Assembly: GCF_022045235.1 (NCBI RefSeq)
Contig: NW_027266276.1
Coordinates: forward strand, 186,001 to 250,000
Direction of reading: 5' to 3'
Length of the DNA stretch: 64,000 nucleotides
Source: Haliotis cracherodii
Lineage: Eukaryota
Shown: in pieces, positions 4,653 to 6,380 of the stretch
Numbering within the stretch: position 1 is the stretch's first letter
How the letters are laid out: every line of letters starts with the position of its first letter
Notes under the pieces: generated by a model
The model's input: the letters and a program-made list of their open reading frames with translations, nothing else
The model's database searches: none
Told to the model about the DNA's origin: nothing
Program-made: the position numbers and the translations under genes

Positions 4653-6380
4653 TTAGTAGAAGAATCAGCGATAATTCTTATTTCGCCATCAGTTTGGAGG
4701 TGTCACACCGTTCACCGTTACAGCTCAACTGTTGATCCCCACAGCTTCCCCATCTGGGTTGGATAGCCTCTGATGACTTACAGCCATTTCCAACTTCTGA
4801 GAAGGTTCTCTCTTGTCGGTACGGCAACCCGACCCTTCTCTGCACAAGTGCAAGTTGGAGCGAGGTTCTCCATTAGTTATGGCTAAGTCATTACTAATAT
4901 GAAGTTAACTGCCACGACAGTATGTTTTCCATATTGAGAGGCCATATGGTATAACATTTATAAAAAATAGATGTCCTACTAAGGGACGACATCTCTCGTG
5001 TGATGTCAATGAGGGAATACTCTGAGCATCGCCTGATGTCAGATTACCCCAACAGGCATAATGTTATTGACTAGCTGTGATCTGGAACCTGCTCCATTGG
5101 TATGAAATACAAAACGCAAGATGATTATTTACTATTTATTGCGGTTAATTACCGTTACTGATTGAACACAAACTGTTTTTGTAATTATATCTTGACTAAG
5201 TTACATGTATGTATTGTCTTGATTAGTACTGTAGAACTACGGATGAATCCAAACCTCTTAATTTAATGGTTATGTGACTAAAGATTTTAAGTTGTTATTC
5301 ATTGTATCTAAAAACACCATCACCAATCCCATCACCGTACATTCTGTACATACTATAACTATGGTCTTACAACCACATATTCAGAGTATATTACAAACGG
5401 ATATGGTCATTGCATGAATGACTAATACATATATATGTTAAAATATATGGAACACAGCACTTTCAGGAGTAAAATTACTCTAAGCATGAAACATTAAAAC
5501 TTTTGATGACATTAAAAACGGTACATATATAAGGATATATGAGAAAATAAAAGACCTGCGTGAGGTATATTCCCAGAAAATGAACGAAAAATTGAAAAAA
5601 TTGGTGGTATATAATGGTATATCCTGTTACCGGAACCCAAAATGGGAAGTATTATAGAATATTATTAGTATGCTGGATACTAATCTGCTTTATCGTACCG
5701 ACTATATTGTCTGAGATTGTATCTCATCATGCTCATTGTGGGCTCGTGTCTTCCACTCGTATGTATCCGATCCGTAAGTGCTCCGGCATTCCTTCTTCAT
5801 CTCACTCGCCAAGATGTGGTGTATTGGTTCTTCATATACATATCTCGCCTTATGTACATCGAGGTGTTGTGGTACGCAGTACCTTATCTACTCGCCGTTA
5901 GACAATCGGCACCCAGTCTTAAGTCAGACATAACCATATTGTACATGTGTACATCAAATGGTATAACGCAATATACCTATAGCTTATTCACTCGCCGTAA
6001 GATAAGCCGGGCTATGCCCTATGCCATGCAGAACTTAGTAATGTGGCTAAATTAACCTACAAATATAGGTTTGCGTGGGCCGGACGCTACGCTTCGAATC
6101 GGCTTATACTCATGGTATATTCCGATGTACCCGAGTGACAACAGCTGTATGAGAGATACCGCTATACAAGAAACGGAAATTAAACGGCTGCCGTGTCAGC
6201 CAATTACAAAAACAGTAAGTGATATTCACAGAGTAACATATACATATTCACACACTTGTAATATCCAACGATATCAAGCACCATGATCACAGTCTGTCCC
6301 TGTTCAGTGCCGAGTAGGATTCCATAGTGATTATGCGGCGTTCACCTGGTTCAATCCGAGATTACCGTTTTCAATCCTCT

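What the first reader, a model, noticed from the sequence alone, without database searches (positions are those of the whole stretch)
4653..6380. Very long (~1.75 kb) R2 3' UTR: hypervariable sequence but conserved, covarying hairpins
SEEN: the 3' UTR is 1728 bp in copy 1 and 1768 bp in copy 2 (13149-14916), and its middle is far more diverged than the ORF. Hairpins persist with compensatory change: gtcatt/aatgac (5406-5422) vs gatcatt/aatgatc (13896-13914); catatat/atatatg (5524-5541) vs gcatatat/atatatgc (14013-14032); gagta/tactc in all three copies (5467, about 13957, 22157). An 11-bp stem gagtggtatac-cgcc-gtataccactc (14116-14141) is replaced at the same position in copy 3 by a different perfect 11-bp stem tgctgtcatat-cacc-atatgacagca (22319-22344) and is cleanly deleted in copy 1. 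KNOWN: R2 3' UTRs are typically a few hundred nt and bind R2 protein for TPRT. INFERENCE: this is a large structured RNA domain under structural selection, with a role beyond template recognition (scaffold, small-RNA precursor, or evasion of sequence-based silencing).
Basis: partly seen in the sequence, partly recalled or inferred. Interest (0 to 1): 0.8.

Follow-up and report, generated by a model that had tools for sequence, protein, structure and literature searches.

The report
Long, hairpin-rich R2 3' UTR
A ribosomal-DNA retrotransposon (R2) in this animal genome carries an unusually long 1.7-kb tail after its gene; the tail is real, fast-evolving and packed with short stem-loops, some kept by paired base changes, but no single large fold or extra function is shown.

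Summary
The stretch between the R2 stop codon and the 28S junction is 1728 nt in copy 1 and 1768 nt in copy 2. It is present at full length in all seven full-length copies in the genome (four independent lineages). Its first two thirds also lie in contigs of a related species. A second R2 family (copy 3) shares colinear blocks of it. It has no copies outside R2, so it is not a nested transposon.

The middle diverges at 1.1-3 times the synonymous rate of the ORF. Perfect short hairpins are 3-4 times commoner than in shuffled sequence, and 15 control stretches of the same window show no such excess. The 11-bp stem does sit at the homologous place in copy 3, with 6 of 11 pairs changed on both sides and none broken.

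- The structure is a string of small, individually dispensable stem-loops.
- Global covariation is nil.
- Copy 1's middle folds no better than shuffles.
- Unbiased covariation tests do not beat their controls.
- Template-switch mutation could produce the same perfect stems.
- Stems of 11 bp or less make a small-RNA precursor unlikely.

This scan had already noted the relic R2 array and the GGCGAG hairpins on this same window.

The parts
4653..6380 (-). Copy 1 (lineage A) R2 3' UTR, 1728 nt, from the base after stop codon 6381-6383 to the last R2 base before 28S TAGCC (4648-4652).
   Evidence: full-length homologues in 7 genomic copies
4653..5100 (-). 3'-terminal module (about 450 nt): the best-conserved part and the putative R2-protein/TPRT recognition region.
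   Evidence: 88-96% identical among lineages. 73-74% identical to copy 3 at 20308-20638. Kept in 5'-truncated copies L009-L011 and in an internally deleted form in a relative (joint 5106->6526). Best alifold z-scores, -3 to -4. Compensatory steps in GACAUC/GAUGUC and CCAACUU/AAGUUGG helices.
4660..4679 (-). Terminal hairpin AAGAAU(U/C)A-UCGC-UGAUUCUU, 7 nt before the R2 3' end. C-G in L003 against U.G in the other lineages.
5101..5730 (-). AT-rich, indel-prone, fast-evolving middle holding most of the short hairpins.
   Evidence: JC distance 0.13-0.39, which is 1.1-3 times dS. Hairpins of 6 bp or more: 8 against 2.0 expected. MFE z-score +0.44.
5406..5422 (-). Hairpin GUCAUU-CAUGC-AAUGAC. Lineages B and D have AUCAUU/AAUGAU, one G-C to A-U compensatory pair.
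   Evidence: helix 10
5467..5483 (-). Hairpin GAGUA-loop-UACUC. The sequence is conserved in all lineages and in copy 3, with no covariation.
   Evidence: helix 8
5524..5541 (-). Hairpin CAUAUAU-CCUU-AUAUAUG, an (AU)n palindrome. B and D add an outer G-C pair. It is not kept in copy 3.
   Evidence: helix 7
5664..5684 (-). Hairpin AUUAGUAU-CMAGC-AUACUAAU (8 bp). The stem is identical in A, B and C; L004 (D) has one A-to-G change giving a G.U pair.
   Evidence: helix 1
5731..6380 (-). 5' module of the UTR. Its first ~140 nt (6241-6380) are conserved non-coding sequence shared with two other R2 families.
5798..6007 (-). Four stem-loops that each present GGCGA(G) in the loop (motif at 5805-5810, 5844-5849, 5891-5896 and 5991-5996). 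The stems differ and the loops do not vary.
   Evidence: Copy 3 keeps one at 23045-23073 with a C-G to U-A change in the stem.
13149..14916 (-). Copy 2 (lineage B) R2 3' UTR, 1768 nt.
14013..14231 (-). Run of five perfect Watson-Crick hairpins in lineage B: 9 bp (14210-14231), 8 bp (14184-14204), 8 bp (14142-14160), 11 bp (14116-14141) and 8 bp (14013-14032).
   Evidence: region MFE z-score -4.86
14116..14141 (-). 11-bp stem GAGUGGUAUAC-GGCG-GUAUACCACUC. It is present in B and, with one A.C mismatch, in D. It is deleted in A and in L003.
20308..25670 (-). Copy 3 (a second R2 family) 3' UTR. It is 5.36 kb because two dispersed repeats are nested in it, at about 24000-25430 and 20640-21610. Colinear homology to the family-1 UTR lies at 25540-25670, 22978-23086, 22075-22378 and 20308-20638.
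22319..22344 (-). Copy 3 homologue of the 11-bp stem: UGCUGUCAUAU-GGUG-AUAUGACAGCA. Six of 11 pairs are changed on both sides and none is broken.

Best explanation
This is the true 3' untranslated region of a three-zinc-finger (A-clade-like) R2 retrotransposon family. It is not an insertion and not an assembly artefact. It has three parts.

(1) The last ~450 nt are the conventional R2 3' UTR. They are a folded module that the R2 protein would bind to start target-primed reverse transcription at the 28S nick. This role is inferred from R2Bm and R2Tg and is not shown here.

(2) The ~650 nt after the stop codon begin with a leader conserved across three R2 families. They also carry four hairpins that each display a GGCGA(G) loop.

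(3) Between them lies an AT-rich spacer that changes faster than synonymous sites, yet stays 3-4 times richer in short perfect hairpins than chance.

The upstream 1.3 kb is best read as a string of small, independent stem-loops on the sense RNA. What is retained is local pairing, not sequence. Each hairpin is individually expendable.

The likeliest role (inferred) is accessory. The stem-loops would stabilise an uncapped, non-polyadenylated R2 RNA or serve as protein-docking sites upstream of the priming module. Individual hairpins would be made, and kept perfect, partly by template-switch mutation.
For: Real and family-wide:
- Seven full-length copies in four lineages, 1728-1772 nt.
- A 1323-nt contig of a related species covers window 5311-6435.
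- The full-UTR genome search returned only R2 UTR copies or their 3'-end fragments.
- Colinear blocks in copy 3.

The lineages diverged while still coding. dN/dS is 0.19-0.33, and the 28S flanks are 99% identical against 64-96% in the UTR.

The element is an R2:
- The canonical TAGCCAAAUGCC junction is present.
- Pfam finds RVT_1.
- The protein matches the R2Tg structure at 2e-91 and R2Bm at 4e-41.
- Three zinc fingers and a Myb motif are visible.

The hairpin excess is specific to the R2 UTRs.

Compensatory changes:
- 11-bp stem, 6 of 11 pairs.
- 5406 hairpin, 1 pair.
- GGCGAG hairpin stem, C-G to U-A.
- GACAUC to GACAAC, and the series A-U / G.U / G-C in CCAACUU/AAGUUGG.
- Curated set: 8 pairs against 3.9 +/- 1.5.

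G.U outnumbers A.C at stem positions, 111 cells against 61 in the UTR and 22 against 24 in the ORF. This hints at the sense strand.

The four GGCGAG loops do not vary while their stems differ.

Published R2s need only the last 65-250 nt of the 3' UTR (PMC12222951).
Against: - No global covariation.
- The held-out copy 3 keeps 14 of 29 doubly changed pairs, against 20 of 54 in slid controls.
- In the column-permutation test, the ORF and mirror-repeat controls show similar deficits of change. Within family 1, double compensations are at chance: 6/3.2, 6/6.4, 6/4.2 and 5/2.4.
- Thermodynamic stability is lineage-specific.
- The 11-bp hairpin was lost twice. A relative holds a form lacking 1419 nt, made up of the last 145 nt of the ORF and about 1.27 kb of UTR.
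- The UTR evolves at about dS or faster.
- The stems are perfect Watson-Crick pairs and include transversion swaps, as expected of template switching (PMC8794818).
- All copies seen are dead.
- Transcription is not shown, because the RNA label of the runs is a guess.
- There are only 4-5 independent lineages.
Confidence: 0.5

Rival explanations
1. Mutational by-product. The upstream UTR is a neutral spacer. Its hairpins are created and kept perfect by template switching, in which an inverted copy of one arm overwrites the other. This could happen during reverse transcription by the jump-prone R2 enzyme or during DNA replication. The paired changes then need no selection on RNA structure.
For: - The middle evolves 1.1-3 times faster than synonymous sites.
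- Stems are perfect Watson-Crick, with swaps such as G-C to U-A and G-C to C-G that cannot pass through G.U.
- The long perfect stems are concentrated in one lineage, B.
- In B, the 3' arm of the 9-bp hairpin differs from the other lineages by a cluster of changes that all restore complementarity.
- Hairpins are lost by deletion between short direct repeats.
- Template switching is documented to create and repair stems (PMC8794818).
- Snap-backs and duplications occur in R2 insertions (PMC12222951).
- L004 carries a chimeric duplication of the UTR.
Against: - Fifteen non-R2 stretches of the same window show no hairpin excess, so this is not a general replication bias.
- The 11-bp stem kept its position and loop across two R2 families about 25% apart.
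- The four invariant GGCGAG loops on different stems are not explained by arm copying.
- A.C is depleted relative to G.U.
Confidence: 0.3
2. The upstream 1.3 kb is a functional structured RNA platform with its own role, distinct from template recognition. Examples are an array of protein-binding stem-loops that capture the nascent R2 protein in cis, or that recruit a host factor.
For: - It is retained at full length in four lineages and in a sister species.
- The leader is conserved in three R2 families.
- The GGCGAG-loop motif occurs four times per copy.
- Covariation is seen in the curated hairpins.
- Known R2 proteins need far less 3' UTR.
Against: - Sequence constraint is about neutral.
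- There is no global fold.
- Modules are deleted in some lineages and in a relative's variant.
- There is no expression or binding evidence.
Confidence: 0.2
3. Chance palindromes in neutrally decaying dead copies. The hairpins are ordinary AT-rich coincidences.
For: Aggregate compensation within family 1 is at chance.
Against: - A hairpin excess with p<0.01 in every lineage, absent from the controls.
- Six of 11 compensated pairs in one stem.
- Divergence predates insertion, with dN/dS 0.19-0.33.
Confidence: 0.05
4. The extra length is a nested foreign element, or the hairpins are small-RNA precursors.
For: Copy 3's UTR does contain two nested dispersed repeats.
Against: - The family-1 UTR has no copies outside R2.
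- It contains no conserved ORF, no tandem repeat and no Rfam match.
- The longest stems are 11 bp. The only 20-nt inverted repeat is not conserved in B. This is too short for Dicer-type processing (general knowledge).
Confidence: 0.03

Closest known systems
R2Tg (zebra finch, A-clade) 3' UTR
   Same: It lies between the stop codon and the 28S TAGCC junction. The protein here is closest to this group. A conserved terminal hairpin sits just before the 3' end.
   Different: R2Tg's UTR is 325 nt and only its last 65-67 nt (a pseudoknot) are needed (PMC12222951). Here the UTR is 1728-1772 nt, with 1.3 kb of extra stem-loops. An equivalent pseudoknot was not demonstrated.
R2Bm (silkmoth) and R2Bg (cockroach) 3' UTRs
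   Same: They are structured 3' UTRs whose fold, rather than sequence, is thought to be recognised (PMC12203849).
   Different: They are 248 nt and 600 bp long. Reported full-length R2s measure 3348-5417 bp in total (PMC3581529), so this UTR alone is 3-7 times the characterised ones.
Internally deleted non-autonomous R2 derivatives (PMC3414825)
   Same: A relative's contig joins the ORF end (6526) directly to the last ~450 nt (5106). It keeps the 3' module, as those derivatives do.
   Different: It was seen once, in one low-depth contig of another species, and was not characterised.
Template-switch-generated RNA hairpins (Monttinen and Loytynoja 2022, PMC8794818)
   Same: Perfect stems, multi-base 'compensatory' changes and clustered substitutions.
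   Different: That work concerns replication-associated events in RNA genes.

Membership tests
R2 (28S-specific non-LTR retrotransposon) | 3' junction at the canonical 28S site ...AAGG|TAGCCAAAUGCC | tested here: met
   R2 ends CTACTAA and is followed by TAGCCAAATGCCTCGTCATC in copies 1 and 2, L002, L005 and L007. The Rfam LSU match in the window lies at 4001-4531, starting about 120 nt from the junction.
R2 (28S-specific non-LTR retrotransposon) | Single ORF with reverse transcriptase followed by a C-terminal zinc knuckle and restriction-like endonuclease | tested here: met
   Pfam RVT_1. The 510-aa C-terminal piece aligns over residues 2-497 to R2Bm and at 1e-91 to vertebrate R2 structures. 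All copies seen carry stops or frameshifts.
R2 (28S-specific non-LTR retrotransposon) | N-terminal zinc finger(s) plus Myb DNA-binding region (three fingers define A-clade) | tested here: met
   Three Cys/His finger motifs and a Myb-like WTSREV... segment were read in the translation of 18540-19844. This was judged by eye. Pfam gave no hit.
R2 (28S-specific non-LTR retrotransposon) | 5' HDV-like self-cleaving ribozyme | not tested
Outside this finding.
R2 3' UTR as TPRT template-recognition RNA | Binding by the R2 protein and priming from the 3' end | not testable with these tools
   Indirect only: conservation of the last ~450 nt, and its retention in truncated and deleted copies.
Evolutionarily conserved structured RNA (covariation-supported) | Significant covariation for a consensus structure in an unbiased test | tested here: inconclusive
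   Global test negative. Held-out and permutation tests do not beat their controls. A curated local hairpin set is positive, 8 pairs against 3.9 with 4 of 500 shuffles as high, but those helices were hand-picked. Only 5 lineages are available.
Small-RNA (miRNA/siRNA) precursor hairpin | A stem of about 20 bp or more, conserved | tested here: not met
   The longest perfect stems are 11 bp. The 20-nt long-range inverted repeat is strong only in A and D.
Nested transposon or foreign insertion | The segment occurs elsewhere in the genome independently of R2, or is absent from most family members | tested here: not met
   The genome search with the full UTR returned only R2 UTR copies or 3'-end fragments, and all seven full-length copies hold the whole UTR. 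By contrast, copy 3's extra 2.4 kb is nested repeats.

The most novel reading that the evidence does not exclude
The upstream 1.3 kb is a second functional RNA module of R2. It would be an array of protein-docking stem-loops: four invariant GGCGA(G) loops plus covarying hairpins. Their sequence is free to change faster than synonymous sites, perhaps under pressure to escape sequence-based (piRNA) silencing, while pairing is preserved. That would add a new layer to R2 RNA biology beyond the terminal priming element.
Probability: 0.15. Interest if true: 0.7.

Novelty: new variant of a known kind. Interest (0 to 1): 0.4.

Why it matters
R2 3' UTRs are the handle by which R2 proteins choose their template, and they are now being engineered for RNA-templated gene insertion. 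The characterised examples are 250-600 nt, and only the last 65-250 nt are needed. A family that has kept about 1.3 kb of extra hairpin-rich RNA through several lineages and into a sister species raises two possibilities. One is accessory RNA functions such as stability, cis-capture of protein or silencing evasion. The other is a clean natural example of reverse-transcription-linked template switching that builds and maintains hairpins. Either would interest retrotransposon and RNA-evolution specialists. With only dead copies and five lineages, it remains a lead rather than a result.

Tried and rejected
- **Single large fold.** RNAalifold on 1 kb of four lineages gave a covariation term of +0.5. 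A sliding alifold z-scan was weak and equal on both strands.
- **Long-range closing helix.** The 20-nt inverted repeat 5167-5186 / 6202-6221 scores -22 and -17 kcal/mol in A and D. It scores -6 in B, the same as shuffled arms, and a cross-lineage table shows no cognate preference. Rejected.
- **Known RNA family.** Rfam at E up to 5 gave 0 hits.
- **Tandem repeats.** None found.
- **Hidden ORF or read-through.** The stop codon is conserved in three families with further in-frame stops, and no conserved open frame exists.
- **Stem-conservation permutation test.** It looked significant. ORF hairpins and non-pairing mirror repeats then showed similar deficits, so I do not rely on it.
- **Deepening the alignment.** The other R2 families in the genome share only the ORF end plus about 140 nt. 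The best protein relative is only 38% identical (a mollusc), so no close loci could be fetched.
- **Reads.** The relatives' contigs could only be laid, not retrieved.

Full report
**Setting**

The window is G000:C13:186001-250000 of a 1.18-Gb animal genome. The best protein relative is molluscan, at only 38% identity. The window holds three dead R2 copies on the minus strand. Each abuts a fragment of 28S rDNA. Around them lie a Ty3/gypsy-like element, dispersed repeats and a 138-bp satellite. An earlier follow-up in this scan (s1-826166) had already read this as a relic R2 array, and my maps agree.

The element is an R2 by several criteria:
- Its 3' end, CTACTAA, is followed by TAGCCAAATGCCTCGTCATC, the canonical 28S target.
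- Pfam finds RVT_1.
- The 510-aa C-terminal piece matches solved vertebrate A-clade R2 proteins at about 1e-91 and R2Bm at 4e-41.
- The N-terminal frame shows three zinc fingers and a Myb-like motif.

**The observation**

All coordinates are exact. The UTR is 4653-6380 (1728 nt) in copy 1 and 13149-14916 (1768 nt) in copy 2.

A search of the whole genome with the UTR found seven full-length copies of 1728-1772 nt. They fall into four lineages:
- A: copy 1 and L002.
- B: copy 2, L005 and L007.
- C: L003, which lies outside rDNA.
- D: L004.

The search also found three 5'-truncated 3' ends and nothing unrelated to R2. The 1.7 kb is therefore neither a private insertion nor a nested repeat.

Contigs of a related species cover the UTR. 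One 1323-nt contig spans 5311-6435 with 72 differences.

Copy 3 belongs to a second R2 family that is 73-78% identical. A profile of the family-1 UTR finds four colinear blocks in it. Its 5.36-kb length is inflated by two nested dispersed repeats.

The lineages diverged as living elements:
- The 28S flanks of copies 1 and 2 are 99% identical, while the UTR is 64-96% identical.
- The last 499 codons give dS 0.08-0.13 and dN/dS 0.19-0.33.

Against that yardstick, the Jukes-Cantor distances along the UTR are as follows.

| UTR part | JC distance |
|---|---|
| First 140 nt | 0.04-0.11 |
| 5' module | 0.09-0.19 |
| Middle | 0.13-0.39 |
| 3' module | 0.07-0.13 |

'Hypervariable middle' is therefore fair. 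The middle changes 1.1-3 times faster than synonymous sites.

**Are the hairpins more than chance?**

Yes. Perfect Watson-Crick stems of 6 bp or more, with loops of 3-10 nt, number 12-16 per UTR. Dinucleotide shuffles give about 4 (p<0.01 in every lineage). Lineage B has six stems of 8 bp or more against 0.2-0.3 expected. The excess is greatest in the middle, at 8-9 against 2-2.5. The ORF shows a weaker excess of about twofold. Fifteen 1750-nt control stretches of the same window hold 0-8, equal to expectation. Hairpin richness is thus a property of the R2 UTR and not of this genome's DNA.

**Compensatory change**

In the profile alignment the copy 2 and copy 3 versions share position and loop (GGCG and GGUG). 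Read outward from the loop, 6 of 11 pairs differ on both sides and none is broken. Because copy 3 is an outgroup family, the hairpin is ancestral. It was lost twice, by a 35-nt deletion in A and by a 25-nt deletion with different ends in L003.

Other real cases:
- G-C to A-U in the 5406 hairpin.
- C-G to U-A in the stem of a GGCGAG hairpin in copy 3.
- U-A to A-U in GACAUC/GAUGUC.
- The series A-U, G.U, G-C in CCAACUU/AAGUUGG of the 3' module.

I also tested seven curated hairpins on five lineages:
- 88.5% of cells pair.
- 8 pairs change on both sides, against 3.9 +/- 1.5 in shuffles (4 of 500 as high) and 0-3 in slid controls.
- MAFFT misaligns three further pairs of the 11-bp stem, so the true count is higher.

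These helices were chosen because they looked good, so this number flatters the case.

**Unbiased tests are much weaker**

- Global RNAalifold on the first 1 kb gives a covariation term of +0.5, and 7 of 273 pairs are compensatory.
- Local helices were predicted from family 1 and then checked on copy 3, which had been held out. They keep 14 of 29 doubly changed pairs, against 20 of 54 in slid controls.
- A column-permutation test first suggested that stems change less than their surroundings. ORF hairpins and non-pairing mirror repeats showed similar deficits. Within family 1 the double compensations were at chance.
- Thermodynamic z-scores are -1.7 for the 3' module, -1.0 for the 5' module, +0.44 for copy 1's middle and -4.9 for copy 2's middle.
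- A 20-nt long-range inverted repeat in copy 1 is not conserved.

There is therefore no evidence for one large folded domain. What exists is a string of short stem-loops of unequal persistence.

**Anatomy**

The last ~450 nt behave like an ordinary R2 3' UTR. They are the best-conserved part and have the best alifold z-scores (-3 to -4). They are retained in 5'-truncated copies. They are also retained in a relative's internally deleted form that joins 6526 to 5106.

The first ~140 nt after the stop codon are conserved non-coding sequence in three R2 families, and the stop codon itself is conserved.

At 5798-6007, four hairpins with different stems each display an invariant GGCGA(G) loop. This motif was noted separately in this scan (s1-826408). 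It is the feature hardest to explain without function.

At stem positions G.U outnumbers A.C, 111 cells against 61 in the UTR and 22 against 24 in the ORF. This is a weak pointer to the sense RNA.

**Mechanism**

I commit, at about 0.5, to the following reading. This is a genuine long R2 3' UTR with a conventional terminal priming module. The 1.3-kb upstream extension is a chain of small, individually dispensable sense-strand stem-loops under weak selection for pairing. The likeliest role is accessory, in RNA stability or protein docking.

The main rival, at about 0.3, is that the hairpins are made and homogenised by template switching without any selection. That mechanism is documented to create perfect stems and multi-base 'compensatory' changes (PMC8794818).

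Points for the rival:
- The faster-than-synonymous rate.
- Perfect Watson-Crick stems with transversion swaps.
- The concentration of long stems in lineage B.
- The chimeric duplication in L004.

Points against the rival:
- The hairpin excess is specific to the R2 UTR.
- The 11-bp hairpin has persisted across two families.
- The GGCGAG loops do not vary.

The two readings are not exclusive.

A small-RNA precursor is unlikely because stems are 11 bp or less. Silencing evasion is untested.

**Comparison and novelty**

Characterised R2 3' UTRs are 248 nt (R2Bm), 325 nt (R2Tg, with the last 65-67 nt sufficient) and 600 bp (Blattella). Surveyed full-length R2s are 3.3-5.4 kb in all. From memory, and not checked here, some R2s have longer UTRs. 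A recent survey of more than 330 R2s lists 3' UTR sequences that I could not measure.

I class this as a new variant of a known kind: an ordinary R2 with an unusually long, hairpin-rich and partly covarying 3' UTR. Interest is moderate. Expression is not shown, because the RNA label of the runs is a guess.

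Noticed in passing
L004:2539-3754 (G000:C23, about 74.883 Mb): This R2 copy carries a tandem duplication of about 506 nt of the UTR. The two units are not alike: the first resembles lineage B and the second resembles lineage A. 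It looks like a template jump between two different R2 RNAs, or a recombinant. Its last ~35 nt are replaced by unrelated sequence.
   Followed up: partly
L003 (G000:C13:4112161-4113911): A full-length-UTR R2 copy lies outside rDNA. After TAGCCA the flank is a (GTA/AGT)n microsatellite rather than 28S, which suggests an off-target insertion primed on a few matching bases.
   Followed up: no
window 5106 joined to 6526 (run X18, organism C): One low-depth contig of a related species skips 1419 nt. It fuses the ORF end to the last ~450 nt of the UTR. This may be an internally deleted, non-autonomous R2 derivative.
   Followed up: no
window 6294/6295: Copy 1 alone lacks a 27-nt segment (TGTCTCATCAAGCCGTTAGCACTCATG on the + strand). 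Every other genomic copy has it, and so do the organism-B runs X10 and X16.
   Followed up: yes
window about 24000-25430 and 20640-21610: Two dispersed repeats of about 1.4 kb and 1.0 kb are nested in copy 3's 3' UTR. Dozens of copies at 83-90% identity lie across many contigs. They were not classified.
   Followed up: partly
window 4660-4687: Upstream of the terminal hairpin, the sequence GGCGA (4683-4687) can pair with the hairpin's UCGCU loop, which would form a pseudoknot. The same GGCGA sequence is displayed by the four upstream hairpin loops. This was read by eye and not tested.
   Followed up: no
window 5167-5186 and 6202-6221: A 20-nt inverted repeat, 18 of 20 complementary, spans 1 kb of copy 1's UTR. 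It is strong in lineages A and D only.
   Followed up: yes
window 42200-44350 and 47880-53930: Large arrays of a satellite of about 138 bp with strong positive GC skew produce long spurious ORFs on the minus strand. The satellite unit also contains GGCGAG.
   Followed up: no
window 16388-17275 vs 17677-18566, and 17274-17687 vs 19199-19611: Copy 2 has internal duplications of its RT region and an upstream segment at 98.5-99% identity. It is therefore rearranged as well as frameshifted.
   Followed up: no
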